DNA of 64,000 bases, from IMG/VR virus record IMGVR_UViG_3300046694_000296, positions 151,657 to 215,656 of that record, one strand, 5' to 3'. Under the pieces are notes generated by a model. That model worked only from the letters and a program-made list of their open reading frames with translations. It made no database searches and had not been told where the DNA came from. Position numbers and translations under genes: made by a program. Position 1 is the first letter of the stretch. Every line of letters begins with the position of its first letter. Below are positions 921-63,724 of this stretch, piece after piece.

Positions 921-1559
921 ATGCTGCAATCGGCCCAATCGACTATCAATACCCGCACCTCGACCCGCTACGAGGACCACACCGGCATGCTGCACAAACT
1001 CGCAAAGCGCGGCTGGGGCCGATTGCAGGAGGCAGGGCTCGACGTGACCTACGAGGACGTCTACCAGCATATGTGCGAGAGCTTCGTGAAGTGCCAGTCC
1101 ACCTACAAGGTCGACACCGGCTTCTCGTTCTCGGCGTATTACGGTCGCTCGATCTGGAACAACTTCAACCACTGGGCCGAGCGCCAGATCGAGGAGAAGC
1201 ATACGCTTGGCCTCGTCTCGGTCGAGAGCCTGTGCGGCAGCGACGACGAAGGCGAAACCGACGTGTTCGAATTCATCGAGCAAGAGGACGACGAAGAGAC
1301 GCCTGAAGACCGGCTCGCCGCGCGTCAGGAGTCGCACCGGCTTGCCCGCATGCTCTCGGACGATGCCAAGCGCATGGTCGCGCTGCTCGCGCACCAGACC
1401 CCGGCGCTCGAACAGTGGATGGACGAGCGCAACGCGCGCATGTTGAAAAAGACCTACCAAATCAACCTGTGGCTCATTGGCGAGTTCCTGGGTTTCGAGC
1501 GCAAGAAGGTGAGTCGCCTGCGCCTGGAGCTGGAGCGCGTCTACGGCGTGGAGCTGTGA
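921..1559 (+). CDS. sigma70-like transcription factor
   Basis: Region-2-like segment (YEDVYQHMCESFVKC...FSFSAYYGRSIWN) and C-terminal HTH-like segment (LWLIGEFLGFERKKVSRLR); ATG at 921. Confidence 0.55.
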   Translation: MLQSAQSTINTRTSTRYEDHTGMLHKLAKRGWGRLQEAGLDVTYEDVYQHMCESFVKCQSTYKVDTGFSFSAYYGRSIWNNFNHWAERQIEEKHTLGLVSVESLCGSDDEGETDVFEFIEQEDDEETPEDRLAARQESHRLARMLSDDAKRMVALLAHQTPALEQWMDERNARMLKKTYQINLWLIGEFLGFERKKVSRLRLELERVYGVEL

Positions 1560-2173
1560 TGAGCCACCCGAGCTGCTTCGGGCTGCCGTCGGTGTTCACC
1601 GCGAGCACGCAGACCTGCACGGCGTGCGCCTCGCGCAGCGAATGCGTGAGCGCCTGCTATTCGATGCTCGTCTCGCTCTCGGACAAGATCGACGTGACGG
1701 CCCCGCTCGCGCAGCTAGAGCGCACGGCCCGCGTCGTGACCGCGCAGTCGATACCCGCGCACGCGGTCGCAACGACGATCGCGGCGCCCGCGCCCGCCGC
1801 AGTGCAGGTGAACCTGGCGCACGGTGAGCGCGAGCATGACCTTCTTACGAGCCTGCCTGTGCGGGTGCAAAAGGTGATGCGCCCGCTTCTCAAGCGCGGC
1901 GGGGATGCCCGCGCACGCCTTGCGCTCGCGAAAGGGCAGAACCCCTTCGACGGGCGCGGCCCGCAGTGGTTGCGCCTTGCCGGTGAAAAGCTCCTCGCCG
2001 GCAGCTTCACCAAGGGCGAGCTGCGGCACGCCTACATCAACGAATACGGCTGGTCGGAGTCGACCGCCTTCTCGCGCGTGTCCATCGTCGTGTCGGTGAT
2101 TCCGGCGTTGCGTCTGGGCCGCGTCAGGGGCGACACGGTGCTTCGTGCGCCGACGCTCGCCCGGGATCATTGA
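1559..2173 (+). CDS. hypothetical protein: Cys-rich N-terminus, possible C-terminal winged helix
   Basis: Start overlaps upstream stop (TGATG); SCFG...CTAC...EC; 'KGELRHAYINEYGWSESTAFSRVS' is HTH-like. Confidence 0.55.
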   Translation: MSHPSCFGLPSVFTASTQTCTACASRSECVSACYSMLVSLSDKIDVTAPLAQLERTARVVTAQSIPAHAVATTIAAPAPAAVQVNLAHGEREHDLLTSLPVRVQKVMRPLLKRGGDARARLALAKGQNPFDGRGPQWLRLAGEKLLAGSFTKGELRHAYINEYGWSESTAFSRVSIVVSVIPALRLGRVRGDTVLRAPTLARDH

Positions 2174-5549: not shown

Positions 5550-5592
5550 GCCTCACTATACTCGGTAGCGTCTAGTAAGTAACAGGTGACAT

Positions 5593-6090
5593 ATGGAACA
5601 GTGGAAAGACGTCGTTGGCTACGAAGGGCGCTATCAGGTATCGGATCTCGGCAATGTGCGCAGCTTGCCGAATGCAACACGCTCGGGGGTCCGGCTTTTG
5701 GCGCTCAACACATTTCGCAACGGCTACAAATACGTGAACCTCTATCGAGGCACGTCAAAGAAGGAGAAGTGGCTCGTGCACATGCTGGTCGCGCAGGCAT
5801 TTATTGGCTCTGCACCGGTCGGGCAAGAAGTTCGGCACCGCGACGGCGTGCGCGGGAACTGCGCGCTTACCAACCTATGTTACGGAACGCGAGTAGAGAA
5901 CCAAGCAGATCGGATCGAGCATGGGACGTCTAATCAAGGCGTTAGGCATCCCCGCGCCAGGCTCGTAGAGACGCAAGTATTGGAGATTAGAAACTCCAAT
6001 GAGATCGCTTCAACATTAGCAGCAAAGTATTCAGTTTCAGAGTCGCTGATCCACCAGATCAAGCGATGCCAAGTATGGCGACACATTTAA
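5593..6090 (+). CDS. NUMOD4/HNH homing endonuclease
   Basis: EQWKDVVGYEGRYQVSDLGNVRS (NUMOD4), VHMLVAQAF...RHRDGVRGNCALTNL (HNH); lower GC than neighbours. Confidence 0.9.
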   Translation: MEQWKDVVGYEGRYQVSDLGNVRSLPNATRSGVRLLALNTFRNGYKYVNLYRGTSKKEKWLVHMLVAQAFIGSAPVGQEVRHRDGVRGNCALTNLCYGTRVENQADRIEHGTSNQGVRHPRARLVETQVLEIRNSNEIASTLAAKYSVSESLIHQIKRCQVWRHI

Positions 6091-11096: not shown

Positions 11097-11540
11097 ATGG
11101 CTGAGCTGAAGGTCAAGGAGTGGAAACCGTCACCCTGCGGCAAGTATCAGTCGGCGCAGGTCAAGAAGGGCCACAACCTCTACGGCGAGATCCGCAAATA
11201 CACGAACGGCATGAGCATCTACTGGGCCTTCAGGAAGCCCGACGAGGTGTTCGTGGAGCTTGACGCCTGGGCGATCGACACCGAGACGATCTCCGTGATG
11301 AAGAGCCGGCGCGTCACCCACATCGGCATCCTCGTCTCGAACGGCGACCAATACCTGACGCGCATCGAGACGATGACCGACAAGGACAAAGGTGCGGTCG
11401 TCCTCAACTACACCACCCATCGCGGCGCACGCGGCAAGTTCGGCGCCCGGCAGTGGTATCTGCCGCGCAGCCAGTTCGTGCAGCAACTCGCGCCGCCCGA
11501 GTCCACCATCGAGCAGATGAAGATCAAAGGACGAAGATAA
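11097..11540 (+). CDS. hypothetical protein
   Basis: Translationally coupled ORF with typical codon usage. Confidence 0.6.
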   Translation: MAELKVKEWKPSPCGKYQSAQVKKGHNLYGEIRKYTNGMSIYWAFRKPDEVFVELDAWAIDTETISVMKSRRVTHIGILVSNGDQYLTRIETMTDKDKGAVVLNYTTHRGARGKFGARQWYLPRSQFVQQLAPPESTIEQMKIKGRR

Positions 11541-11596
11541 GTAAGCCGTTACGTGTTTGCTACAATCGGTCATTCTGAAATGAGGGAACCAACACG

Positions 11597-12004
11597 ATGA
11601 TTCTAGCCACAGCGCTTTTATGCCTGACCATGAATGTTTACTTCGAGGCCCGCGACCAACCGATTGCCGGGCAATACGCAGTCGCCGCCGTCACCATGAA
11701 CCGCGCGGCCGACGATCCGAAACAGGTCTGCGATGTGGTGATGCAGCCGCATCAATTCAGCTGGACCGATAAGCTCCTCCAGCGCGACGAAGTGGGCTGG
11801 AAGCTGCGCAAGGCCGGCGTGCCCAAGGACGACTTCGCATGGGCTATGGCAAGCCGAGTCGCCTTCAACACGCTCAATGGCCACAAGATCGACGCCACGC
11901 ACGGCGCGACCTACTATCACACGAAGGAAGTGCGCCCCGCGTGGCGCAAGCAATTCATCCACGCAGTGACGATCGGCGACCACGTTTTTTATCGCGTAAC
12001 GTAA
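11597..12004 (+). CDS. SleB/Hydrolase_2-family cell wall hydrolase
   Basis: CLTMNVYFEARDQ...AVAAVTMNR...VCDVV.QPHQFSW...GATYYH...IGDHVFY. Confidence 0.9.
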   Translation: MILATALLCLTMNVYFEARDQPIAGQYAVAAVTMNRAADDPKQVCDVVMQPHQFSWTDKLLQRDEVGWKLRKAGVPKDDFAWAMASRVAFNTLNGHKIDATHGATYYHTKEVRPAWRKQFIHAVTIGDHVFYRVT

Positions 12005-12075
12005 GCAACGCGTTACTATACTATCACCTGTAGCGAACAAGTTTCACCCTATCAACCACTCAGGAGTCACCTCGC

Positions 12076-16843: not shown

Positions 16844-16976
16844 GCGCGCAAGCGCTCTGCCTACCTATACTGAAAAGGGAAGAGGTCGCAAGGGCGACTT
16901 ATTTTTTGGCTTTGCTGTAGAGTAACCGCTGACTTACAATCTCTTCCCCCTCTCCGAACGAACCCGAGAAACACTG

Positions 16977-20540: not shown

Positions 20541-20619
20541 TTCGCCGTAACGTATAAGTCACGCGTTACTATACTGTCACCTAACGCCCGGGCAACCGGG
20601 CATTACCTGAAGGAAGAGC

Positions 20620-22050: not shown

Positions 22051-22135
22051 TGCAACGGTAACGGGTTGCCTCACTATACTGATAAGTAACCCGTTACACA
22101 CGGTTAAAACGAAACCTCTACAGGAGCAACACCTC

Positions 22136-24563: not shown

Positions 24564-24941
24564 CCATGACGAACGAACGGAAGAAAGAGATCGAGGCGAT
24601 CGGCGACCAGGAATGGCGACAGATGATGAACGAGGTGGACGTCGCCGATGGGTTGAGGCCCGAGCGGCGGATTTTCACCATCATGCCGAGCGTGAAGCAG
24701 AACATTTCGTTCTTCGGCGCAGCGCACGAGACGATCCTCTACGTCACGGAGGAGGGCGAGTTCAACTGGTGCGCGAACCCGGAGGAGGCGATCCTCGCGA
24801 TGGAGGCGGCCGGCACGAACAAGCCGATTGCCGCGCTGCTGCGTCGTTTGCGCGATTACGAGAATCAAGTTTGAGCTCCAATCGCTCACGCTTACTATAC
24901 TGGTAAGTAACACGTTACCAACCAACTATTACAGAGGGAAC

Positions 24942-27491: not shown

Positions 27492-27625
27492 TGCTGCCTC
27501 ATAGCAGTTGAAAGCAGCGATGCTAGCGAGTTCCTGCGTCGAACACAAACTCCAAAATGTATACGCAGCGGGCCGACCAGCGCTCACTATACTGAGTAAC
27601 AGGTAACTTATTTATTGAGGTGTGT

Positions 27626-29698: not shown

Positions 29699-30216
29699 GA
29701 TCCTGCTGTTCAACCTGCTGGTCCCCGCAATTGCTCACCCGAAGGTGGCGCATTTACGGCTGCTCTCGACGCTTGCGCTCCTCATCAAGCTGCCCGTCTT
29801 AGGTATGCTGGGTCGGGTGACCTCGGAAGACGTGAGCATTGAGGAATTAACCAAGCGTCTGAAATCGGTCCAATGACCAGTCTGTAGAGTCTGAATTTGC
29901 AATTGGTTGCACAGGGAAAGCGCAGAGGCGCTTTTATTTTCCCTGTGTGTGTAAGTAATGCCTTACTCATACTATACTGAGTGGAGAGGCTAATGAGAAC
30001 GCCGCGAAAGAGCTACCGCATCTATGGCCGCGCCCCGCGCCACGGTAGTTTCAAGGCAATGGATATGCATAATATGATTCAAGCGTCTCGGATAAGTAAA
30101 GCAACAACTTACTGGGACCGCACCGAAGCTGAGGCAAAGAAGCTGAAGGCTTGGGTGGATGAGTTGAATGCTGAGAAAACTGGCTGGTTGTATGAATTGA
30201 GGGAGGTAAAGGACAA

Positions 30217-35410: not shown

Positions 35411-35668
35411 GCCTCCAGCGCGCAGCCAAGCCTCGCGTGCTATTCGCGCGCCCGCACGCATTCCCTGTTAGCAAAAACGCATCCGAGATGCGAGTGCCGG
35501 GGCCAAAGACCCGTCTTTAAAGTCTCTCTTGTCGCGACGCACTAAGCGACGCGAGACAGGGAAGGGCAAAACGGTCCAGCACCATGCGATACGCGCCTTC
35601 TCCCGGTCGTGAAAATTGAAACCAGCGCGAACACAGCGCAAACCAATCTCACTCAGGAGAAATACGCC

Positions 35669-36721
35669 ATGTCCAAGAAAGCCAACGCCTCGAAGAAGTC
35701 CCTCGTCGTCAACATGATCGGTGCCGCCGAAGCCGCACCGATGGACGCTGATCTCGCAGCGCTCCTGAACGTGCTCGAAGTGCCGGGCGCTGCCGACGCA
35801 AGCGCGCCGACCATCGAGGTGATCGAGCAAGCCAATGCGCCGGTCATCGAAGCCGGGGGCGACATCATCGAGTCCGCTGATGTCGAAACGCTCGACCTGT
35901 CCGAGTCGCTTGCTGCGCTCGAAGACAGCGCGCCGATCATTGCGCTGCCTGAGCTGCTGCCCGAGACGCCTGCGGTGATCGAAATCCCCGCCGAAGTCCT
36001 CGCGGGTGGTGAATCCGCTGAGCTCGACGCGGTGCTCGCCAGCATCGAGGTGCAAAACAGCTACGCCGCAGCGCCCACGGGTGACGTCGATCCGACGATC
36101 GAAGCCGCGACCGAACAAGAAGTCGCAGCCGCCACCGAAGAGCTGCCCGCGGTCGCCGCAGAGCCGGACGAAGAAGCGGGTGCCGCAGCGGGCGCTGCGC
36201 CTGCGAAGACCCGCACGCCGCGCGTGCACTACGCCAACAAGACCGATCGCATCAAAGCGCGCCTCGGTGCGAAGTTGGGCGACTACCTCGTCCTCGAACT
36301 CGCAGACGCCGAGCTCGACGGTGACGCCTTGAAAGCGAAGCAGGACGAGACGCTTGCGGTTATCGACGCGATGTCCGTGAAGGTGAAGAACCGCGCGAGC
36401 CTGCTGCTCGACTGGTTGTCGGGCAAGACCGCGCAGCCGAACGAGATCCTCAAGCGCGCGCTTACCGTTCTGCACGCCGACGGGAAGATCACGACCGGCG
36501 ACAACGGGAACCTCCACAAGAACCTGATCGCGAAGCCGTATTCGACGAGCGCTGCCCGCGCGATGGGCCGCAACACAATCACGGTCATGGAGAAGTGCAA
36601 GATGATCGTCGCCAGCGGGACCAAGGGCGAATACGTGCCGAACGAGAACTCGCTCTTCCTCGGTTTCGCAAACGAGATGATGGGCTTCGCCGCAGCGCCC
36701 GAAGAAGCGTCGGCAGCGTAA
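35669..36721 (+). CDS. protein with very acidic N-terminal half and possible winged-helix C-terminus
   Basis: CAGGAG RBS; E/D/A-rich N-terminal ~170 aa; C-terminus resembles 48597..49268. Confidence 0.7.
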   Translation: MSKKANASKKSLVVNMIGAAEAAPMDADLAALLNVLEVPGAADASAPTIEVIEQANAPVIEAGGDIIESADVETLDLSESLAALEDSAPIIALPELLPETPAVIEIPAEVLAGGESAELDAVLASIEVQNSYAAAPTGDVDPTIEAATEQEVAAATEELPAVAAEPDEEAGAAAGAAPAKTRTPRVHYANKTDRIKARLGAKLGDYLVLELADAELDGDALKAKQDETLAVIDAMSVKVKNRASLLLDWLSGKTAQPNEILKRALTVLHADGKITTGDNGNLHKNLIAKPYSTSAARAMGRNTITVMEKCKMIVASGTKGEYVPNENSLFLGFANEMMGFAAAPEEASAA

Positions 36722-37009
36722 GCGCGAGGGAAGCGGGCTTCGGCCCGCTTCGTCGGCCGGGCACCGCGCCTTGGAGATTGCGGGCCGGGCCCGGGATTTC
36801 GACCCATGCGCAGGTATTCCCGCGTCTATCGACGGGCAGGCAGACGCGCGGCACACGCGCAACATTTTGCGCACATACCGCAACAAATTTCTTACGAAGA
36901 TGCAACGCATCCGTGGCGGGTGGCTATACTGGACAGTAACCGCTAACTTACTAAACGCCAATGATCGGTGCGCAGAATAAGCACATCGCAACCACAACGA
37001 GAAACGACC

Positions 37010-37555: not shown

Positions 37556-40500
37556 CCACTGCCGCGACGCAGGTCCAAATGTATTACGCCGCAGAGCGCC
37601 GCTCTGCTGAAGTCAACCTGACCTTCCTCGATCTGGTGAAGGACGGGATGACGTGCGAGGAGCTCGCCCGCAACATCGAACGCCGCCCGAGCCTCTGGCA
37701 GCGCTTCGAGCACTGGGTTCCGCACCTGCCGTCGAAGGTGACGGCATGACCGTCAACGAGTGCATCCGAGTGATGCAAGCGCTCAAGGATCAGGGGCACG
37801 GCCGCAAGCAGATCGTGCTGACCGACTGGCAAGTCAATTCGTCCATCGACACGATCCAGCTGAGCGAAGGCAAGCGCCAGCGCGTGCTGGTGTCGTTCGA
37901 CTACGGCGACCTCGATGGGGAGGACGCATGAAGCTCACCTGCAATCAGATGATCCTCCTGCTCGCGCTCTATCGCGGCTCGGTCATCGCGCACGTCGCCA
38001 CGGGCACGAAGGAGGCCGACTTCAATCGCCTTCGTGAGCTCGGCTATGTCGATGGGCTGGACTGCATCACGCGCGCCGGTGATGAGCGCGTGGTCAAGGC
38101 GCTCGCAGGTGTCGGGGTGGCCGCATGAGCACCCTCACTGTTCGCCTCTATCAATCTGGCGCTGACCGCGAAGAGGCGGTGCGCGCCGGTGTCGCGGGTG
38201 AGTTCGACGCGCTCGTGCGGCGTTACAAAGACGCCTCGATTCCGGTCCACGTGCTCGTCGGGTTCAAGCCGACCGCGCCGTATTCGAGCGACTACCACAC
38301 GGGCGGCCGACAGGGCGCGCTCCTGCGGGAAATGTGCCGTCACGCGAACGGGGTGGCCGCATGAGCATCGCTTTCTGCGACAAGCCGCTCGCCGCCGAAG
38401 GCTACACGAGCTATCGCTACAAGGGCCGCTTCGGCTGGATCATGATCGGCGCGCACGACACGGACGACGCGCTGCGTGAAGCTCGCCGCAGCACCGACGA
38501 TCCGGTGACGGTCGCCGGGCTTCAAATCTGGAATGGCAACGAATACACGGAGGTAACAGCATGACCCGCCCCTACAACGTCATCAACATCAACGGCTACA
38601 TCGTGCCCGCCACGTTTCACGACGCGCTCAAGAAGATCCTCGTCGCCATCAAGGAAGGGCGCGTCAAGGCCAAAGCAGCGCGCCGCTATGTCAAGCAGGT
38701 CAACCTCGCAGGCGACACCTGCATGTGCGCCATCGGCGCGCTGCTGACGCGGGAACAGTTGGCTGAAATCCTCGATGAGGGAATGAACGGCAAGGGGCTT
38801 TCCCGCCTTGCGACTTGGTTCGGCGCGCGCAACATCGAGGCGATGACGGCCATGACGTCGTGGGATTCCGGCTGGTTGCAGGCAAATTTTGACAGCTACG
38901 CCGAAGACGACGCGATGCCTGCCTTCGAGGTGCGCCTACTCCGCTACATGGATGAGAAGCCCAACTACCCGAACCCCGCCATCGAACACACCGGCGCGTG
39001 GCACTTCCCGGTGAGCCTGACGGCATAAGCACGCCCGACGAAATGTGGAAGTGTCAGGACGGTCGCCTCATCGCAGTCGGCGACATGACCGAGGCCCACG
39101 CCAAGAACGTGCTGCGCATGATCCTGCGCAATAACCGCCAGCGCCGCGCGTTGCAAGCCGATCTCGATCGCCTCGAAGTCTCGCTACGCGAGATGGTGGA
39201 AGAGCATCGCAAGTGGGGCAGCGATTGAATCCAGCCGGGCGCCACAGCCCGGTCGGGAGAATTCACACATCGACAACGCGCACAGGGAGCGCACAGCATG
39301 AAATGGTTGATCCTCAAAGAGCCCATCGCTGCCGAGCTGGGCACGCCGCCTGACTCCATCGGGCACGGGCGCGTGAAGCCTGCCCATCGTCCGGTGATCG
39401 ACGCGATCAACGCCGAAGCGCGCGAGCAGTTCCTCGCCGAATACACGGTCCTGTGGCCGTATGAGTTCCAGCTCCTCGATGACGACGGTGCCGTCTACTT
39501 CGAGGGCAAGTGCGGCGACATCGCGCTCGCGCCGGCCGACGAAGCATTCGCGCCGCTCGACTGGGCCAAGAACGACTCGGGCTGCACGGAGCTGCGCTAC
39601 CGCAAGGTGGGCGCCGACAAATGGGAGACGCTATGACCGTCCTCTACGAAGCGGTGCGCGAATTCCTCGAACGGGCCAAGGGCGACGATCTAGTCGATGC
39701 GCTCACAGACCTGCGCGACGCCTACGTGAACACGACCGTCGCCGACGGTGGGCTGATCGAAGCCGCACGCGACCGTTACGCGCTCGGGAGCAGCGACAAC
39801 ATCGAAATCGACGACGGCGCGCTGACGTCCATCGGCGACGAGGGCACATGGGTGCAGGCGTGGGTCTGGATGGAACACGAGGACGACGAAGACGACTGCG
39901 GCTGCCCGCTCGGTTTGCTGAAAGGTGAGACGTGTGGCGTTTGCGGGAAGACCACCTGATGCGCCTCATCTTCTTCCCGAAGTCGTTGCCTAATCCGTTC
40001 ACCATCGCGCTGTCAGGCATGACCGTCGATGATTTCGGCAATCAGATCCACCTGGAGGGCAACGCGCAGTGGTTCGCCGCCGCGAACTTCAGCGACGAAA
40101 ACTACTTCGACGCATCGACCGGCTTCGGCCCGCTCGGTTGGCGCGAAGCCATGAATAAGTAAGGGGTTACTCATGCACCTGACAGCAAGAGAGCGTCGCC
40201 TCATGAAAGCGGCACCCACCCTGAGCACGACGCAGCGCGTGTCCATCGCCCGTCATTGGCCCAAGTCGCGCGGGCAAGCGGCGACGGTCCTGTCTGCTGA
40301 GCATGTGGCGCGCGATGCGAACTACCCGGACATCGACCAGACCGGCAAGGGCCAGTTCAAGGGCAAGTGCAATCGCACGGCGTGCGAAGAGCGGGGCGAG
40401 GACATCGCATGGTGGAACCGCCCGATGCGGGCCTTCTACTGCTCGGACTGCCGCCGCGAGATCAGCCGCTTCGACGACTACCGCGGCACGCCGCAGCAGA

Positions 40501-47929: not shown

Positions 47930-47985
47930 AATTGCCGTAACAACGATTTACCTGAGTGGTCTTCGCCTAACACGCAAGATCTTTG

Positions 47986-48014
47986 ACGGCACCCGTTTGG
48001 GTGCCGTTTTTTTT
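47986..48014 (+). terminator. intrinsic terminator ending the small-gene array
   Basis: ACGGCACCC-GTTT-GGGTGCCGT then T-run. Confidence 0.85.
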
Positions 48015-48489
48015 CGTGTGGCCGATTTTGCCACGGCTCAAGGCCCGTATAGGCGACTAGGCTGAAAAGCGCTCACCGGCGTGCAGCGGGTTTGGTGCCG
48101 AGCCGCCCGGTGCCGCGGAATGGGGATGGCGACGGACCCGTATAGGCGGCTTGGACGAAAAGAGGGCGACGCCGGGCAGGGCGCCGGGCCAAGGGCCAGG
48201 GCCAAAACCGGGTGCCAAGACCCTTCGGGCCGCAGAAGATCAGGGCCACAGAGCATCGGGCCATGACGATGTTAGAGATGCGTAACAATATCGTTAGAGA
48301 TGCGATACATCGCACCGCGTAACACATTCGTTAGAACTACCAGATATCCCAGGGTGACGCATCGCGCGCCCGCCCCTCACATAAGAACAGAACGCGCACG
48401 CACGCGACTACCAGACGCGCCCGGGCGTCGTCAAGCGGTCCTCGTAAAAACAACGTCAACAAATCTCTAACTTTTTTTGCACAAACCTA

Positions 48490-48517
48490 TTGCGTAAGTA
48501 ACGCGTTACTCTATAAT
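48490..48517 (+). promoter_or_regulatory. strong sigma70-type promoter with a perfect palindrome in the spacer
   Basis: TTGCGT-16 nt-TATAAT; spacer contains AGTAACGCGTTACT (48497-48510); A/T-rich upstream. Confidence 0.8.
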
Positions 48518-48596
48518 TCATCCCTGTAGCACGCAGTAACGAACGGGACGCACAAAGCGCCCGACGAAAAAATCAATCACTCAATAAGGTAAGAAA

Positions 48597-49268
48597 ATGT
48601 CGAACGCAAAAGAGCAAGTTATCACCCTCGAAAACGTCAAGCTCGCTATCTCGCGCGCAAATGACCGTCACTCGAAAAAGACCGGTGAAACGGGTTTTCA
48701 AGCTGACTTGCTGAAAGCAGTCAAATACTGGGACGATGGTTTGTGTGTCTTCGTCGCGGGCATGCTGAACCGGGCGCGCATCGACCAACTGACGTTCTTG
48801 TCTACCATCGCAGATAACATGCCCGTTAAAGCGGTGATGCGCGCTTCTGAGTTTTTCGCTTGTTTGCATGCAAAGAACTACAAACAGCTTGACGGTGTAA
48901 CCGCGCTTTCGATTCTGAGCGCGATTCATGCGGGCGCTGTCTCCCGTAGCGCGATTTTCTTCGCATCGACCGGGCGCGGGAATGAATCGACGTCTGACGT
49001 CGTTAGCGATGTTTCGCTTGTTCGCAAGCTGCAAAAAGCACTTGGTAAGACGGTCGGTGCTACCACTGAAAGCACGCAGAATTCCCGGTCGTTTGGTGTA
49101 AACGGGTTCTGTCGCTTTCTCAATATGGGCGAAATGGTAAAGGTGAAGGGCAAAGAAGCAGTGTTAGAAGTTAATGCTAAATCGCCCTTTGTTGCTGCTA
49201 TCGCTAAGATGGTAGAGGTAGCAAGCGAAGATACCCTGTCGCTTGTTAAGGGCGCGAAGAAAGACTAA
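48597..49268 (+). CDS. hypothetical protein, candidate first-expressed gene/regulator
   Basis: 223 aa ORF, TAAGGT RBS, atypical codon choice, flanked by perfect palindromes. Confidence 0.75.
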   Translation: MSNAKEQVITLENVKLAISRANDRHSKKTGETGFQADLLKAVKYWDDGLCVFVAGMLNRARIDQLTFLSTIADNMPVKAVMRASEFFACLHAKNYKQLDGVTALSILSAIHAGAVSRSAIFFASTGRGNESTSDVVSDVSLVRKLQKALGKTVGATTESTQNSRSFGVNGFCRFLNMGEMVKVKGKEAVLEVNAKSPFVAAIAKMVEVASEDTLSLVKGAKKD

Positions 49269-49331
49269 GTAACGCGTTACTTGCCCGGGCGCTAATCGCG
49301 CCCGGTTCTCTACTCTGCTAGGTATCCCGCT

Positions 49332-49550
49332 ATGTCTTCGCAAGTCTTCGCCCTTGTCGTGCTCTGGTCTGTTCTCATGGTCGTCGCATCGTTCGCCCTT
49401 GTGCATATCGCTTTCCCTGCTCGCACTAGCACGCAGATTGACATCGAACGCGCCCGCGCCCGCATCGACGCTAACCGCAAGCGTCGCGCGATGAAAGCAA
49501 ACGCGCCCGCTAAACGTCGCATTGCCCGCGCTATTCGCGCCCGCGTCTAA
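49332..49550 (+). CDS. small membrane-anchored Arg-rich protein
   Basis: Hydrophobic N-terminal helix and ARAR-rich tail. Confidence 0.55.
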   Translation: MSSQVFALVVLWSVLMVVASFALVHIAFPARTSTQIDIERARARIDANRKRRAMKANAPAKRRIARAIRARV

Positions 49551-54019: not shown

Positions 54020-54059
54020 GTGTGGAAAAATGAGTAACGCGTGACTTACCTTATACCAG

Positions 54060-54707
54060 ATGACAACTACTCCGACAGCTCTCCGTGTTTCCGTTGACGC
54101 GCTTCGTGCAAATCCGTGGAACACCAACAGCCTCACACCCGAGAACGAAGCGAAGCTCGATGCTTCCATCGTGCGCTTCGGCGTCTACAAGCCGATCGTC
54201 GTGCGCCCGCACCCGGACGGCGAGGGCTACGAAATTCTGGGCGGTCAGCATCGGTGGGAGGCAGCGCGCCGCGCGGGCCACGCTGATGTGCTGATCGTCA
54301 ACGTCGGCCCCGTGTCTGATCTGACGGCCAAAGAGATTGGCCTCGTCGACAACGGCCGCTACGGCGAAGACGACACGCTGGCGCTCTCGCGCTTGCTCAA
54401 GGAGATGGGCGTCGAGGACATCGGCACCTTCCTTCCCTACACCGACGGCGAGCTGGAAAACATTCTCGCTGCTTCAAGTATAGATCTCGACGACCTAGAC
54501 AAGCTGGATGAGGCCGAAATGCCTGATCTGTCGGGTCCGGGCGTGGGCGCCACGCATCAGGTGATGCGCTTCAAGGTGCCTGTCGAGGATGTCGCGTGGG
54601 TCACGAGCGCCATCGAGCGCCGCCAGCGCGAGGCCGGTTTCACCACCGAAGACTCCATGACGAACGCCGGCATGGCCTTCGTCGATCTGATGAAGGCATA
54701 CAAATGA
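54060..54707 (+). CDS. ParB/Srx N-terminal-domain protein
   Basis: LRANPWNTN, GVYKPIVVRP, EILGGQHRWEAA; no obvious HTH. Confidence 0.8.
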   Translation: MTTTPTALRVSVDALRANPWNTNSLTPENEAKLDASIVRFGVYKPIVVRPHPDGEGYEILGGQHRWEAARRAGHADVLIVNVGPVSDLTAKEIGLVDNGRYGEDDTLALSRLLKEMGVEDIGTFLPYTDGELENILAASSIDLDDLDKLDEAEMPDLSGPGVGATHQVMRFKVPVEDVAWVTSAIERRQREAGFTTEDSMTNAGMAFVDLMKAYK

Positions 54708-55168
54708 TCCGCTACATCGGCACCAAGGTCATTCTCGCGCGCCCCATGACGCGCGGCGCATACAACGACTATCGAGGCTGGACGATTCCCGCCAACGAAG
54801 ACCCGCTTGAAGAAGGCTATCTCGTCGAATACACGGACGGCGGTGCGTCGAACCACGTCAACCACGCGGGCTATGTCTCCTGGAGCCCCAAGGACGTGTT
54901 CGAGGCAGCCTACCGACCCACCGTCGGCATGAGCTTCGGTATGGCTATCGAGGCGATGAAGATAGGCATGCGCGTCGCACGCGTGGGCTGGAACGGCAAG
55001 GGCATGTTCCTTGAGCTTTTCAGCCCATCCGGTGCCGGCCTCATTCTCCAATCGGGCGAGAGCATCTCCGAGCTTCCGTGGATCGGTATGAAGACCGTCG
55101 AGGGCAAGTTCGTGCCTTGGTTCGCATCGCAGGCTGACATGCTCTCGGACGACTGGATCACGGTATGA
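54704..55168 (+). CDS. DUF2829/Tad2-like domain with an extra N-terminal domain
   Basis: C-half MSFGMAIEAMKIGMRVARVGWNGKGMFL...VPWFASQADMLSDDW; N-half YIGTK...GYLVEY...YVSWSPKDVFEAAY. Confidence 0.75.
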   Translation: MIRYIGTKVILARPMTRGAYNDYRGWTIPANEDPLEEGYLVEYTDGGASNHVNHAGYVSWSPKDVFEAAYRPTVGMSFGMAIEAMKIGMRVARVGWNGKGMFLELFSPSGAGLILQSGESISELPWIGMKTVEGKFVPWFASQADMLSDDWITV

Positions 55169-55434
55169 GCAAGCCATACGGTTTCGCCGCTATCCCGCGC
55201 GCCGAGTTTCTCTACCCGGAGTGCGAGTCCTGCTACTTCCACAACCTCGAGCCTGCCATCTGCGAGAACTGCGACAACGGCGATCAATACGAGCCGGATG
55301 ACGACCTCGAAGACAAGCTCTCCGAGCGCAAGGCCGCCATCGTGCGGTTCTTCCGCAAGATCAGAACACCCCTGCCGGCCGAGTTCCTGCAAGACGAACT
55401 GCCGGTGCCCGAAAAGGAGCTCGAAGCAGCATGA
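55165..55434 (+). CDS. small Cys-rich protein
   Basis: CESC...CENC; coupled on both sides. Confidence 0.6.
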   Translation: MSKPYGFAAIPRAEFLYPECESCYFHNLEPAICENCDNGDQYEPDDDLEDKLSERKAAIVRFFRKIRTPLPAEFLQDELPVPEKELEAA

Positions 55435-56075
55435 GCCAAGTCACCCGAACCAATGAAGTGCGTGCGGTCGCCGACCTCGTGCCGTATGCGAAGAACGTCA
55501 AGAAGCACGACGACGCGCAGGTCGCCAAGATCATCGAGTCGGTCCAGCAATTCGGCTGGACGCAGCCCATCGTGATCGACGAAGCCAACGTCATCATCGC
55601 CGGCCACGGCCGGCGCCTGGCGGCCACCAAGCTCGGCATGAAGCAGGTGCCGGTGCTCGTGCTGCGCGGCCTGACCGATGAGCAGAAGCGCGCGCTGCGC
55701 CTGGCCGACAACCGCACGAACGAGGGCGGCATCGACACGCTCATGTTCCGCGAGGAGATGCTTGGCATCGAGGATCTGCTCACCGGCATCTTCGACACGA
55801 AGGAGCTCGAGTTCTCGGCGGCCGATCTGGGCACGCTCAACGAGGCTGCCTTCGTGCCCGACGTCGCGGAAGCGGTCGAGATGCAGGAGATGGAAGCGCA
55901 CGCGAAGGCCGATGAAGTCGTTGCGCGCCGCGTGCCGCTCTCCAAGGCATTCGGCTTCAAGGACGTGGCCGGCGCGCACGAGATCCACATCTCGCGCTTC
56001 ATGGCGCGTGCGCAGGCCGAAACCGGGTTGACGGGCGCCGACGCGCTCGCGGCTTTCCTCGAAACCCTCGCGTAA
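55431..56075 (+). CDS. ParB/Srx N-terminal-domain protein (type often fused to phage DNA-modifying enzymes)
   Basis: LVPYAKNVKKH...QFGWTQPIVID..IIAGHGR..AA..LG...LRLADN. Confidence 0.85.
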   Translation: MSQVTRTNEVRAVADLVPYAKNVKKHDDAQVAKIIESVQQFGWTQPIVIDEANVIIAGHGRRLAATKLGMKQVPVLVLRGLTDEQKRALRLADNRTNEGGIDTLMFREEMLGIEDLLTGIFDTKELEFSAADLGTLNEAAFVPDVAEAVEMQEMEAHAKADEVVARRVPLSKAFGFKDVAGAHEIHISRFMARAQAETGLTGADALAAFLETLA

Positions 56076-56089
56076 GTAACCCGTAACTC

Positions 56090-56806
56090 ATGACCACATA
56101 CACCATCGACAAGCGCTTCCACACGCGCGTCGCGCGCAGCCAGCGCGTCGTGGAAGTCGCTGAAGCGTTCGGCCTTGGGCTGGACGACAAGGAATTCGTG
56201 ATCTTCGACCAGCTGAAGCTGGACGTCGCGCAAGGCGACGTGATCTACATCACCGGCCAGTCCGGCAGCGGCAAGTCGCTGCTCCTGCGCGAGCTGTCCG
56301 CGCAGATGGCCGCCGAAGGCCAGAAGGTCGCGAACCTCGATGAGGTGGCGATCGACCCGGATGCGCCGCTCATCGACCAGATCGGCACCAGCACGAACGA
56401 TGCGATCCGGCTGCTCTCGATTGCCGGCCTGAACGACGCGTATCTCTTCATCCGCAAGCCCGGCGAGCTCTCCGACGGCCAGCGCTACCGCTTCAAGCTC
56501 GCCAAAGCCATCGAGTCGCAGGCCGACGTCTGGGTCGCTGACGAGTTCATGGCGGTGCTCGACCGGACCGCGGCCAAGGTGATCGCGTATGCCGTGCAGA
56601 AGACCGCGCGCAAGGTCAACGCGACCGTGATCGTTGCGACTACCCACCTCGACCTCGTGGAAGACCTGCAGCCGTCGCTCTACATCGAAAAAAGGTATCG
56701 AGAAAAGCTGCGCATCGAAGCATTCACCGACCTCAACGCGGCGGCCGAAGGCTCGAAGACCCTCACGCGCGATGAAGCCTACGACCTCATGAAAAGGATG
56801 GCCTGA
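56090..56806 (+). CDS. stand-alone ABC ATPase
   Basis: GQSGSGKS, LSDGQRYR, VADEF, ATTH; no permease nearby. Confidence 0.85.
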   Translation: MTTYTIDKRFHTRVARSQRVVEVAEAFGLGLDDKEFVIFDQLKLDVAQGDVIYITGQSGSGKSLLLRELSAQMAAEGQKVANLDEVAIDPDAPLIDQIGTSTNDAIRLLSIAGLNDAYLFIRKPGELSDGQRYRFKLAKAIESQADVWVADEFMAVLDRTAAKVIAYAVQKTARKVNATVIVATTHLDLVEDLQPSLYIEKRYREKLRIEAFTDLNAAAEGSKTLTRDEAYDLMKRMA

Positions 56807-57135
56807 TGAACCCGAAGTATGAAGCGGCGCTCGAAGCGTCGAAGACCCGCCCGCAAGTCGTGATTTTCACGGCAGCCTGGTGCGGCCCGTGCAAGCTGCT
56901 CAAGCCCGCGCTGCAGGCGCTCAAGGCCGACTACGGCTTTGACTATCACGAGTTCGACGCAGCGGAGTTCGAGCAGGCGGAGTTGCTGACGCTCGGCGTG
57001 CGCAACGTGCCGAACGTGCGCGTGCTCCTGAACACCGTCGTGAAGGCACAGTTCGTCGGCGCGCGCACGAAGGCGCAGGTCGAGGACTGGCTCACGGAGC
57101 TGGGCGTCATCTCGCGCGGACTGAGCTTCGAATGA
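56806..57135 (+). CDS. thioredoxin
   Basis: FTAAWCGPCK, GVRNVP. Confidence 0.9.
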   Translation: MNPKYEAALEASKTRPQVVIFTAAWCGPCKLLKPALQALKADYGFDYHEFDAAEFEQAELLTLGVRNVPNVRVLLNTVVKAQFVGARTKAQVEDWLTELGVISRGLSFE

Positions 57136-58900: not shown

Positions 58901-59077
58901 ACATGAAAGGATAGAGAGCACGATGAGATCAGGACCGCGGGCGGGAAATGCTGCCCAAAGAAGTAAGTCACGGGTTATTTACTTTCGGCCCGCGGCCCGG
59001 TATAGTCTGCCCTTAGAGAAACACCTCCAAGGGGCAGACCGAGCAACGGCTGCCCCATTTTTTTTGCTTGAGAGCCA

Positions 59078-61037: not shown

Positions 61038-61084
61038 TGCTAGGATAAGTAACCCGTTACTCTACGATAGGCCGACCCTGAACC

Positions 61085-63633: not shown

Positions 63634-63724
63634 GCCGTGCACAAAATGTTGTAAACCCGTGGCGTTCCTGTTAAAGTAAGTCACGGGTTACTTTACCCAT
63701 TTTCTTTTCGAAAGGAAGATTGAT

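What the first reader, a model, noticed from the sequence alone, without database searches (positions are those of the whole stretch)
48497..49282. Gene bracketed by the only two perfect palindromes; part of a putative winged-helix paralog family
Seen: AGTAACGCGTTACT is perfect only at 48497 (in the promoter) and 49268 (overlapping the stop; 16-bp AAGTAACGCGTTACTT). The protein shares M.VK...RAS and N..S.F patterns with the C-terminus of 35669..36721, and more loosely with 1559..2173. Inference: an autoregulated master regulator or a first-expressed host-takeover factor; the two sites could also loop or excise the gene.
Basis: partly seen in the sequence, partly recalled or inferred. Interest (0 to 1): 0.6.

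Follow-up and report, generated by a model that had tools for sequence, protein, structure and literature searches.

The report
Phage-plasmid regulator gene flanked by operators
The two perfect palindromes are the best copies of an 18-bp operator-like site found about 33 times per genome in this Burkholderia-type SSU5-like phage-plasmid, and the gene between them encodes an unnamed winged-helix protein that is probably a regulator under, and perhaps exerting, this control.

Summary
AGTAACGCGTTACT is perfect only at 48497 and 49268, in the window and in the whole 215,656-bp record. But these are not isolated sites. They are the two best copies of an 18-bp dyad, TAAGTNAC-NN-GTNACTTA, present about 33 times per ~107-kb genome against 0-2 in shuffles. 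Twenty-nine of 33 copies are intergenic, and they sit on or beside -10-like hexamers. Five of six related genomes carry 29-36 copies (a sixth, 11), and a cognate form occurs in Salmonella phage SSU5 and E. coli phage Cyrano.

The bracketed gene (48597..49268) is a single-gene unit. One dyad lies between a -35-like and a perfect -10 hexamer; the other precedes its terminator hairpin. The 223-aa protein has no Pfam, NCBIfam or PADLOC match and no significant PHROG match. Its predicted C-terminal half resembles winged-helix repressors.

It looks like a distant paralog of the winged-helix C-terminus of 35669..36721 (phrog_3932). No link to 1559..2173 was found.

Whether this protein itself binds the dyad is unproven. 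SSU5 and Cyrano have the dyad but no detectable homolog. No excised form was seen.

I rate it a new variant of a known kind: a dispersed-operator regulon of a plasmid prophage.

The parts
47985..48008 (+). Terminator-like hairpin plus T run that ends the upstream + strand operon
48009..48471 (+). Long non-coding leader with two pairs of imperfect direct repeats (48044-48086/48137-48179 and 48280-48314/48317-48351). Function unknown.
   Evidence: A large gap upstream of the gene is also seen in distant relatives.
48472..48495 (+). T tract and two overlapping -35-like hexamers, TTGCAC (48477-48482) and TTGCGT (48490-48495)
   Evidence: Read from the sequence. Relatives keep TTGCAG/TTGCAC at this place. 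Not called by the consensus scan.
48495..48512 (.). Dyad O1, TAAGTAACGCGTTACTCT, holding the perfect 14-mer at 48497-48510. It fills the spacer between the -35-like and -10 hexamers.
   Evidence: Kept with 1-2 changes in genome A, L006, L007 and G002-type loci.
48512..48517 (+). Perfect -10 hexamer TATAAT, 16 nt after TTGCGT
48586..48589 (+). Shine-Dalgarno-like AAGG, 7 nt before the ATG. The context ATAAGGTAA is kept in relatives.
48597..49268 (+). Gene for a 223-aa protein with an N-terminal all-helical domain (about 10-92) and a C-terminal winged-helix-like domain (about 94-220). GC3 is 0.57, against about 0.83 in neighbouring genes.
49266..49283 (.). Dyad O2, TAAGTAACGCGTTACTTG, holding the perfect 16-bp palindrome at 49267-49282. 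It overlaps the stop codon.
   Evidence: Present after the gene in relatives, but shifted by 3 nt (L011) or 12 nt (L012) from the stop, so it is not a coding constraint. In L044 it follows the terminator.
49285..49305 (+). G+C-rich hairpin (8-bp stem, 5-nt loop) followed by TTCTCT. Likely the terminator of the single-gene unit.
   Evidence: Read from the sequence. An equivalent hairpin follows the gene in every relative. The scan does not call it because the T run is short.
49332..49550 (+). Small ORF (72 aa) with a hydrophobic N-terminus, directly downstream. A 45-75-aa gene follows the family member in distant relatives too.
   Evidence: No family hit.
35609..36721 (+). Its N-terminal half is predicted disordered; its C-terminal domain is a clear winged helix (residues 257-340 counted from 35669).
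5576..5593 (.). Dyad copy, 13 nt after a TATACT hexamer and abutting the next start codon
6793..6810 (.). Dyad copy overlapping TATACT, upstream of the SSB gene. SSU5 has a site at the same place.
11538..11555 (.). Dyad copy, 5 nt before TACAAT
12002..12019 (.). Dyad copy overlapping TATACT, upstream of the SbcD/SbcC-like operon. SSU5 has a site at the same place.
16919..16936 (.). Dyad copy overlapping TACAAT, upstream of the ribonucleotide reductase gene
20555..20572 (.). Dyad copy overlapping TATACT
22083..22100 (.). Dyad copy starting 2 nt after TATACT (over the expected start site)
24904..24921 (.). Dyad copy starting 2 nt after TATACT
27593..27610 (.). Dyad copy overlapping the end of TATACT
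29952..29969 (.). Dyad copy, 3 nt before TATACT
36933..36950 (.). Dyad copy 2 nt after TATACT, just downstream of the paralog gene
40156..40173 (.). Dyad copy in a very short gap between two + strand genes
54031..54048 (.). Dyad copy upstream of the first ParB_N gene
56073..56090 (.). Dyad copy between the second ParB_N gene and the ABC-type ATPase gene
58964..58981 (.). Dyad copy upstream of the small-terminase-like gene
61046..61063 (.). Dyad copy between the large terminase and portal genes. SSU5 has a cognate dyad at this same junction.
63677..63694 (.). Dyad copy upstream of the gene that starts near 63711

Best explanation
The window is part of an SSU5-like phage-plasmid of Burkholderiaceae.

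SHOWN. Its genome carries about 33 copies of an 18-bp dyad, TAAGTNAC-NN-GTNACTTA. Nearly all are intergenic. They overlap a -10-like hexamer (TATACT, TACAAT, TATAAT), lie within about 13 nt of one, or sit 0-100 nt ahead of the next gene. The gene at 48597..49268 stands alone, with a dyad in its promoter spacer and another just before its terminator hairpin. Its product has a winged-helix-like C-terminal domain. It resembles, at low significance, the winged-helix C-terminus of the core protein family phrog_3932 (35669..36721 here, SSU5_087 in SSU5).

INFERRED. The dyads are operators for a dimeric DNA-binding protein. Because it sits over the -10/spacer or the start site, that protein keeps RNA polymerase off these promoters, so most phage operons are shut at once, as expected in the plasmid-prophage state. 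The bracketed protein is most likely itself a binder of the dyad. On this reading it is made from a host-type promoter and limits its own synthesis through O1. O2, 771 bp away, may help through cooperative binding or looping, or may act as a block at the gene's end.

In phages that lack this gene (SSU5, Cyrano), the related core winged-helix protein would do the binding.
For: Dyad family:
- 13 copies with up to 2 mismatches in the window against 0.04 expected.
- 33 per genome against 0 in shuffles; 29-36 in four related genomes and 11 in G004, against 0-2. Seen again in five related records.
- 29 of 33 are intergenic although about 89% of the genome is coding.
- They abut or overlap -10-like hexamers. 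TATACT occurs 14 times in the genome, 12 of them intergenic.
- The two variable half-site positions are not complementary more often than chance. This fits protein half-sites, not an RNA stem.

Own gene:
- O1 lies between TTGCGT and TATAAT; O2 lies before the hairpin.
- Both are kept in the ~80% identical sister genome and in relatives down to about 69% protein identity. O2 moves relative to the stop codon.

Protein:
- AF2 model with pLDDT 83.6 and pTM 0.80.
- All top 50 hits of the exhaustive structure search are winged-helix regulators (MarR, PadR, ArsR/SmtB, HxlR), Z 5.2-6.4, on residues about 94-223.
- ArsR-type and HTH hits in the ESM Atlas.
- The segment before the wing (TQxSRSFGxNGF) is the most conserved in 66 family members; T160 and S163 are nearly invariant. 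The outer half-site bases are likewise constant across genomes.

Paralog:
- hhalign aligns 117 collinear columns, E=0.006.
- The family HMM weakly hits SSU5_087 and the sister copy of 35669..36721.
- That protein's C-terminus is a clear winged helix, Z up to 9.9 at about 2 A.
- The shared motifs also appear in a four-way alignment.

Lifestyle: RepA_C, ParA and an HTH gene on the minus strand. The large terminase is 60% identical to those of SSU5-type phage-plasmids.
Against: - SSU5 and Cyrano each have about 22 cognate dyads, some at the same gene junctions, but no detectable member of this protein family. So the family is not needed for the dyad to exist.
- The proposed stand-in, phrog_3932, is also present in Pseudomonas Nickievirus phages. 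Those show no such dyad.
- The winged-helix match of the target is middling (Z about 6). Foldseek against the PDB found nothing. The putative recognition helix is the least confident part of the model.
- In more distant family members the bracket is incomplete: a dyad about 200 nt upstream only, or downstream only.
- No covariation between protein and dyad could be shown. Burkholderia genomes with a changed dyad centre have an unchanged helix.
- Most promoters carrying the dyad lack a -35 element, which also fits an activator.
- An HTH protein next to ParA/RepA also has a dyad at its start in all six genomes.
Confidence: 0.4

Rival explanations
1. The gene is only a target. Another phage protein binds the dyads: the core winged-helix protein (35669..36721, phrog_3932), the HTH protein beside ParA/RepA, or one not yet recognised. 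The bracketed gene is simply the unit with the two best operators, so it is the most tightly shut gene. It could be a switch factor such as an antirepressor or an early regulator with a different DNA target.
For: - The dyad exists in SSU5 and Cyrano without this protein family.
- phrog_3932 is a core gene with a clear winged helix.
- The HTH gene is conserved in all six genomes, each with a dyad at its start. It sits beside ParA and RepA, where a plasmid-prophage repressor would be expected.
- About 30 other units carry the same site, so a dyad at a promoter does not single out its gene as the binder.
Against: - The HTH protein has no detectable homolog in SSU5 either.
- phrog_3932 is present in Nickievirus phages that lack the dyad.
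- DNA-binding regulators commonly carry their best sites at their own promoter, and this gene's product does have a winged-helix-like domain.
Confidence: 0.3
2. The dyad is an activator site that stands in for the missing -35 element, as in phage P1 late promoters. The bracketed protein, made first from its own complete host-type promoter, then turns on the roughly 30 dyad promoters and dampens its own.
For: - Most dyad promoters have a good -10 (TATACT) but no -35-like hexamer. The bracketed gene has TTGCGT plus a perfect TATAAT and an upstream T tract.
- In the commonest arrangement the dyad centre lies about 19-22 bp upstream of the expected start.
- Dyads occur before both replication and structural operons.
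Against: In several promoters the dyad begins 2-13 nt after the -10 hexamer, over the start site (window 5576, 22083, 24904, 36933). A bound protein there should block rather than help. No start sites are mapped, because no RNA data exist for this element.
Confidence: 0.15
3. The dyads serve DNA handling rather than transcription. They could be dispersed centromere-like or loading sites for the two ParB_N proteins and ParA, as with the scattered sop sites of phage-plasmid N15 or Noc sites. The gene between two of them would then be incidental.
For: - Two ParB_N genes and a ParA are conserved in all SSU5-like genomes.
- ParB-type proteins bind 14-16-bp palindromes (established knowledge).
- Two dyads lie within the ParB_N operon.
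- The tendency of sites to pair one A-type and one C-type half could fit a heterodimer of the two ParB_N paralogs.
Against: - The near-exclusive intergenic location and the tight coupling to -10-like hexamers are not expected for loading sites.
- The ParB_N pair is also present in Nickievirus phages without the dyad.
Confidence: 0.06
4. The palindromes act in RNA, as hairpins for processing, stability or termination of the long + strand transcripts.
For: Nearly all copies lie between genes on the same strand and would be transcribed. O2 sits next to a terminator hairpin.
Against: - The variable positions 6 and 13 pair less often than chance (for example 4 observed against 11.2 expected in G003).
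- What is conserved is sequence, not pairing.
- No Rfam match.
Confidence: 0.03
5. The two identical sites are recombination sites that excise or invert the gene as a cassette.
For: The sites share 16 identical bases and, being palindromic, are both direct and inverted repeats.
Against: - No contig in four metagenome assemblies joins the two sites.
- All relatives keep the gene in the same place and orientation.
- The same dyad occurs about 30 more times without rearrangements between the two collinear sister genomes.
Confidence: 0.02

Closest known systems
Phage-plasmid P1: C1 repressor with operators dispersed over the genome (from established knowledge, not tested here)
   Same: A plasmid prophage in which one short operator type recurs at many promoters across the genome, including at regulatory genes. 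This allows global shut-off.
   Different: P1 operators are asymmetric 17-mers bound by a C1 monomer. Here the site is a two-fold dyad. No Pfam, PHROG or NCBIfam family, and hence no known repressor family, matched the 223-aa protein; C1 itself was not compared directly. Here structural-gene junctions carry the site too.
IncP plasmid RK2 global regulon, KorA/KorB with palindromic operators (established knowledge)
   Same: Short palindromes repeated at a dozen or more promoters of a mobile element. The regulators are autoregulated through the same sites.
   Different: KorB is a ParB-family protein and KorA a small HTH protein. The bracketed protein is neither. The ParB_N proteins of this phage are candidates only under a rival explanation.
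P1 late promoters activated by Lpa: a -10 hexamer plus an inverted repeat near -22 in place of a -35 (recalled from the literature, a lead only)
   Same: Promoters with a good -10, no -35, and a conserved dyad centred about 19-22 bp upstream of the start.
   Different: Here the dyad also lies downstream of the -10 in several promoters, which fits repression better. No Lpa-like protein was identified.
MarR / PadR / ArsR-SmtB winged-helix repressors
   Same: The predicted C-terminal fold. Such dimers bind 16-20-bp dyads that overlap promoters, often their own.
   Different: No sequence-family membership. There is an extra all-helical N-terminal domain and a roughly 30-residue insertion carrying the conserved TGKGxExTSD loop. 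Dimerisation is not shown (one search gave no verdict).
phrog_3932 (35669..36721 here; SSU5_087; Nican01_00090), a core protein of SSU5-like phages with no assigned function
   Same: The same order of two helices plus a winged helix, and shared short motifs at aligned positions. Both are unnamed proteins of the same phage group.
   Different: The similarity is statistically weak (hhalign probability 6%). phrog_3932 proteins have a long disordered N-terminal half and an acidic tail. The PHROG scan of the target did not list phrog_3932 at E <= 0.1.
N15 dispersed sop centromere sites (established knowledge)
   Same: A phage-plasmid with short palindromes scattered in the genome, some near promoters.
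   Different: N15 has four sites bound by SopB. Here there are about 33, tightly tied to -10 hexamers.

Membership tests
SSU5-like phage-plasmids | Head and packaging genes related to SSU5, and a genome of about 100-112 kb | tested here: met
   Large terminase 60% identical to SSU5 and to Klebsiella and E. coli phage-plasmids. Forty genes are shared with SSU5 in the same order. Unit genome is about 105-108 kb.
SSU5-like phage-plasmids | Plasmid maintenance genes (replication initiator, partition ATPase) | tested here: met
   RepA_C (E=3e-31) and a ParA-type ATPase on the minus strand at record positions 145.1-147.6 kb. The toxin-antitoxin-like pair was read from the sequence only.
Winged-helix transcription regulators (MarR/PadR/ArsR type) | Winged-helix fold: three helices followed by a beta-hairpin wing | tested here: met
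   Top 50 exhaustive structure hits are all of this kind, Z 5.2-6.4, on residues about 94-223. Atlas hits to ArsR/HTH clusters. The score is moderate, and Foldseek against the PDB found nothing.
Winged-helix transcription regulators (MarR/PadR/ArsR type) | Sequence membership in a named family | tested here: not met
   No Pfam, NCBIfam, PADLOC or PDB-sequence match.
Winged-helix transcription regulators (MarR/PadR/ArsR type) | Homodimer | tested here: inconclusive
   The complex prediction gave no verdict.
Winged-helix transcription regulators (MarR/PadR/ArsR type) | Specific binding to a dyad operator | not testable with these tools
   Needs EMSA, footprinting or DAP-seq.
phrog_3932 family (35669..36721, SSU5_087) | Significant match to the family profile | tested here: not met
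   The PHROG scan of the target lists only two unrelated families, at E about 0.05.
phrog_3932 family (35669..36721, SSU5_087) | Profile-profile similarity and the same fold at aligned positions | tested here: inconclusive
   hhalign: 117 columns, E=0.006, probability 6%. Weak HMM hits to SSU5_087 (E=0.0014) and to the sister copy (E=0.024). Winged helix in both models.
Paralog family including 1559..2173 (phrog_3616) | Any detectable sequence similarity to the target | tested here: not met
   BLASTP E=1.6. hhalign probability 0.2%. Its structure was not predicted.
P1 C1-type dispersed-operator prophage control | One operator type at many promoters across the genome | tested here: met
P1 C1-type dispersed-operator prophage control | Match of the 223-aa protein to any named repressor family (C1 itself was not compared) | tested here: not met
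   No named family matched the protein. tblastn against GenBank phage records found nothing.
ParB/parS-type sites | The binding protein has a ParB_N domain with an HTH | tested here: not met
   The bracketed protein has no ParB_N domain. The two ParB_N genes lie elsewhere, at 54060 and 55431.

The most novel reading that the evidence does not exclude
An undescribed regulon is common to SSU5-like phage-plasmids, from Burkholderia to Salmonella, E. coli and Klebsiella. A single 18-bp dyad at about 20-35 promoters is read by a new winged-helix protein family (phrog_3932 and its offshoot studied here). In this reading the bracketed gene is a lineage-specific duplicate that became the self-limiting immunity or master regulator of the plasmid-prophage state. 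The regulon would be the so far unknown switch between plasmid life and lysis in this group.
Probability: 0.25. Interest if true: 0.7.

Novelty: new variant of a known kind. Interest (0 to 1): 0.5.

Why it matters
SSU5-like phage-plasmids are widespread in Enterobacteriaceae (pHCM2-type plasmids, Cyrano of E. coli LF82) and, as shown here, in soil Burkholderiaceae. The papers I could search describe neither this dyad nor how these elements control plasmid life versus lysis. The LF82 study names only a putative repressor and shows induction by ciprofloxacin (PMC9928086).

A single conserved dyad at most promoters, plus a short list of candidate binders, makes that control directly testable with a few gel shifts and reporter fusions. 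It also gives names and a likely role to two protein families that are currently only 'hypothetical'.

Tried and rejected
- Sequence families: Pfam, NCBIfam, PADLOC and PDB-sequence searches of the target found nothing, and PHROGs gave only two non-significant hits (E about 0.05). Foldseek against the PDB found nothing. BFVD gave only two unnamed phage proteins.
- tblastn and megablast against GenBank phage records: no match. A scan of one genome per species: no match.
- SSU5_120 / CYRAN_113 (216 aa) was considered as the enterobacterial counterpart, because it is a neighbouring stand-alone gene with its own terminator. Rejected: hhalign probability under 1% even with a 15-member profile. By synteny it matches a minus-strand gene instead. 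SSU5_117, which holds the syntenic slot, is unrelated.
- CYRAN_43, the gene expressed 723-fold over background in the LF82 lysogen (PMC9928086), lies in another region next to the integrase and is not the counterpart.
- Homodimer prediction: no verdict, so it counts neither for nor against.
- Covariation between candidate binders and dyad variants. The recognition segments of the target and of the 35669 family are nearly invariant across the six genomes, and the HTH protein varies without an obvious pattern. Uninformative.
- Presence/absence profiling. The ParB_N pair and phrog_3932 are present both in phages with the dyad and in phages without it, so neither is singled out.
- Search for another dispersed palindrome in 50 kb of Pseudomonas phage Nican01: none found, but the test has low power.
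- RNA element: no Rfam match and no compensatory pairing.
- Expression data: no RNA runs hold this sequence.
- Excision: no joint between the two sites.
- One search was a mistaken call and returned only an error.
Full report
WHERE THE WINDOW LIES

The window is the last 64 kb of a 215,656-bp virus record with a 127-bp terminal repeat. A self-comparison shows that this record is two collinear genomes joined head to tail, 1-108,902 and 108,903-215,656, which are 71-89% identical. Independent records of the same phage group are 105-107.5 kb long, and one of them is 99% identical in this gene to the second half. The true unit is therefore about 107 kb, and the double record is probably an assembly join of two co-occurring relatives. 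This is useful here, because the first half supplies a diverged second copy of every feature.

The large terminase is 60% identical to those of Salmonella phage SSU5 and of Klebsiella and E. coli phage-plasmids. Forty genes are shared with SSU5 in the same order. The minus strand carries RepA_C, a ParA-type ATPase and a weak HTH_31 protein. Homologs of the bracketed protein and its neighbours occur in Burkholderia, Paraburkholderia and Caballeronia assemblies and in rhizosphere metagenomes. The element is thus an SSU5-like phage-plasmid of Burkholderiaceae.

THE OBSERVATION

The perfect 14-mer is present only at 48497 and 49268, in the window and in the whole record. The 16-bp palindrome at 49267-49282 overlaps the stop codon.

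The two sites are not unique elements. With up to two mismatches there are 13 copies in the window against 0.04 expected, and 31 in the record. The flanks extend the motif to an 18-bp dyad, TAAGTNAC-NN-GTNACTTA. Allowing two mismatches in its 12 fixed positions gives the following counts, against 0-2 in shuffled sequence:
- 33 copies in each half of the record;
- 36, 29 and 36 in three related genomes;
- 11 in a fourth.

The centre differs between lineages. The Burkholderia provirus has TAAGTCA..aaTGACTTA. Salmonella phage SSU5 and E. coli phage Cyrano each carry about 22 copies of TA[A/G]GTAAGTRYTTACYTA, against 5-7 for a control pattern. Two Pseudomonas Nickievirus phages have 0-3. Some positions are conserved from SSU5 to this phage: the junction between large terminase and portal, and the sites upstream of the SSB and SbcD-like genes.

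Perfect symmetry has no special standing. The central two bases are degenerate. The 99%-identical relative, and the variants in three other metagenomes, have G instead of C at 48504, which breaks the upstream palindrome.

WHAT THE DYADS ARE

In the second genome 29 of 33 copies are intergenic, although about 89% of the sequence is coding by my rough gene calls. Most lie 0-100 nt ahead of a + strand gene. They are tied to -10-like hexamers. TATACT occurs 14 times in that genome, 12 of them intergenic, usually as (T/C)NAC-TATACT-G. There are two main arrangements:
- The right arm of the dyad runs into the hexamer (GTTAC-TATACT). The dyad then covers roughly -27 to -10.
- The dyad begins 2-13 nt after the hexamer, over the expected start site.

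Few of these promoters have a recognisable -35.

The two variable half-site positions (6 and 13) are complementary less often than chance. Observed against expected counts include 4 vs 11.2, 1 vs 4.9 and 11 vs 16.5. The element is therefore not kept as an RNA stem, and Rfam finds nothing. It behaves like two protein half-sites, and sites tend to pair one TAAGTAAC half with one TAAGTCAC half.

I conclude that these are operators for a dimeric DNA-binding protein. Their positions fit repression better than activation, though activation of the -35-less promoters cannot be excluded.

THE BRACKETED GENE

- The upstream operon ends at a hairpin plus T run at 47985-48008.
- About 490 nt of non-coding DNA follow, containing two pairs of imperfect direct repeats.
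- Then come a T tract, TTGCAC/TTGCGT, dyad O1 (48495-48512), a perfect TATAAT (48512-48517), an 80-nt leader, AAGG, and the ATG at 48597.
- The gene ends inside dyad O2 (49266-49283), followed by an 8-bp G+C hairpin (49285-49305).

The consensus promoter scan does not call this promoter, because the first hexamer matches only 3 of 6. The promoter is therefore inferred from the perfect -10 and from conservation.

The sister genome has the same layout with one mismatch in each dyad. So do relatives down to about 69% protein identity. In these, O2 is displaced by 3 or 12 nt from the stop codon, so it is not a by-product of coding. In more distant family members (22-43% identity to the target) the bracket is incomplete: a dyad only after the terminator, only about 200 nt upstream, or a different palindrome in the leader.

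The gene sits in a 50% G+C island. Its GC3 is 0.50-0.67 in all six orthologs, against about 0.83 for neighbouring genes. The odd composition is therefore old and maintained.

THE PROTEIN

It matches no Pfam, NCBIfam, PADLOC or PDB-sequence family, and PHROGs gave only non-significant hits.

The word-based search found 15 homologs. The exhaustive profile search found 72 cluster representatives, nearly all 200-250 aa and none named. Distant members keep the same neighbourhood: a large upstream gap, the gene, a small gene, then a minus-strand block ending in a DEAD-box helicase, two ParB_N genes, an ABC-type ATPase and the terminase. Across 66 aligned members, K78, R82, T160 and S163 are nearly invariant. 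The conserved blocks are VKxxxR, TGKGxExTSD, TQxSRSFGxNGF and a final vN..sP.

The AF2 model is confident overall (pLDDT 83.6, pTM 0.80). It shows five helices (11-92), then helices, a beta hairpin (178-192) and two more helices. Foldseek against the PDB found nothing. The exhaustive aligner returned only winged-helix regulators among its top 50 hits (MarR, PadR, ArsR/SmtB, HxlR; Z 5.2-6.4; residues about 94-223). The ESM Atlas search gave ArsR/HTH clusters for residues 93-216.

This is consistent but moderate evidence for a winged helix with an insertion. The conserved TQxSRSFGxNGF segment falls where the recognition helix should be, but that part of the model has low confidence.

THE PARALOG CLAIM

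BLASTP sees nothing between the target and either proposed relative.

For 35669..36721:
- A 66-member profile against a 27-member profile of that family aligns 117 collinear columns (target 59-209 on 220-341).
- The target-family HMM weakly hits SSU5_087 (E=0.0014 among 416 ORFs) and the sister copy of 35669..36721 (E=0.024 among 5,610 ORFs).
- The AF2 model of that protein has a disordered N-terminal half and a confident C-terminal domain. Residues 257-340 form a canonical winged helix (Z up to 9.9, rmsd about 2 A over 71-75 residues).
- The order of helices and wing matches the target's.
- A four-way alignment with SSU5_087 and Nican01_00090 shows the same short motifs.

I regard distant paralogy as plausible but not proven. 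This family is phrog_3932. It is present in SSU5, Cyrano and both Nickievirus phages.

For 1559..2173 (phrog_3616) no similarity was found.

WHO BINDS THE DYAD

In favour of the bracketed protein:
- It has a DNA-binding-type fold.
- Its own promoter holds a consensus dyad.
- A second dyad closes the gene.
- Its putative recognition segment is as constant as the outer half-site bases.

Against:
- SSU5 and Cyrano have the cognate dyad but no detectable member of the family.
- The neighbouring SSU5_120 and the syntenic SSU5_117 are unrelated.

The related core protein could serve as binder in those phages. However, it also occurs in Nickievirus phages, where I found no such dyad.

Other candidates:
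- The 151-aa HTH protein beside ParA and RepA is conserved in all six genomes, always with a dyad at its start, but it is absent from SSU5 by BLAST.
- The two ParB_N proteins are present in all phages compared, with or without the dyad.

No covariation could be extracted. The homodimer prediction gave no verdict. The identity of the binder therefore remains open. I put 0.4 on the bracketed protein binding its own flanking dyads, and 0.3 on it being only a tightly controlled target.

Excision of the gene between the two sites is not supported. Contigs from four rhizosphere metagenomes show no joint from 48497 to 49268, and all relatives retain the gene. Contigs cannot exclude rare forms. Looping between O1 and O2, 771 bp apart, is possible and untested. 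No RNA data exist for this element, so 'first-expressed' cannot be judged.

COMPARISON WITH KNOWN SYSTEMS

In logic the arrangement is closest to the dispersed-operator control of phage-plasmid P1 by C1, and to the KorA/KorB regulon of RK2. In promoter anatomy it recalls P1 late promoters, which have a dyad near -22 plus a -10. These comparisons rest on my knowledge of the literature, not on tests here.

It differs in the dyad itself, in the protein family and in the breadth of operons covered. Full-text searches found no description of the dyad. The one experimental paper on an SSU5-like element that I read reports ciprofloxacin induction and a putative repressor only (PMC9928086).

VERDICT

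- The palindromes are real and far from chance.
- They are two members of a genome-wide, group-wide operator family that appears undescribed.
- The gene between them encodes an unnamed winged-helix-like protein with a plausible distant paralog in the window.
- Its role as the binder is a reasonable but unproven hypothesis.

Interest is moderate (0.5). I class it as a new variant of a known kind.

Noticed in passing
Whole record (window = record 151657-215656); junction near record position 108,902, outside the window: The 215,656-bp 'genome' is two collinear, 71-89% identical genomes of about 107 kb joined head to tail, closed by a 127-bp terminal repeat. Related records are 105-107.5 kb. It is probably an assembly join of two co-occurring relatives, so 'jumbo' size and 100% completeness estimates for this record would be wrong.
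   Followed up: partly
Window-wide, e.g. 6808, 12017, 20570, 22075, 24896, 27588, 29973, 36925: TATACT, usually as (T/C)NAC-TATACT-G, is almost confined to intergenic DNA (12 of 14 copies in the genome). It looks like the -10 of the phage's own promoter class, mostly without a -35.
   Followed up: partly
All dyad copies in six genomes: Half-site positions 6 and 13 avoid being complementary, so sites tend to pair one TAAGTAAC half with one TAAGTCAC half. This could mean a heterodimeric binder, a directional site, or avoidance of perfect palindromes in a phage that encodes SbcCD-like nucleases.
   Followed up: no
window 48597-49268 and its orthologs: The gene keeps a low GC3 (0.50-0.67) in all six related genomes whose other genes have GC3 near 0.83. 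The atypical composition is long maintained and not a recent import.
   Followed up: partly
window 48044-48086 / 48137-48179 and 48280-48314 / 48317-48351: Two pairs of imperfect direct repeats (43 nt, 74% identical; 35 nt, 71% identical) lie in the 490-nt non-coding stretch upstream of the promoter. Purpose unknown.
   Followed up: no
Record positions 143,859-148,303 (outside the window; locus L049): A minus-strand block holds a toxin-antitoxin-like pair, RepA_C, a ParA-type ATPase and a 151-aa HTH protein, with two or three dyads in the divergent region next to the HTH gene. It looks like the plasmid-maintenance and immunity region.
   Followed up: partly
window 54060-58109: Two ParB_N genes, two ABC-type ATPase genes and a thioredoxin gene lie directly upstream of the terminase genes. 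The block is conserved from SSU5 to Pseudomonas Nickievirus phages. Its role (packaging or partition) is unknown.
   Followed up: no
window 35669-36721, product residues 1-180 and the C-terminal tail: The core winged-helix protein has a long, low-confidence, acidic and proline-rich N-terminal half. In relatives it also has acidic Pro/Glu-rich C-terminal tails, repetitive in one relative.
   Followed up: no
window 49266-49283 in runs X1-X4: Several metagenome contigs begin or end at the downstream dyad, so the shared palindrome seems to break assemblies of co-occurring variants.
   Followed up: no
SSU5 record, last 50 kb (loci L041, L048): A different palindrome, AAACAA-N-TTGTTT, occurs about 11 times in the last 50 kb of SSU5. 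It was not examined further.
   Followed up: no
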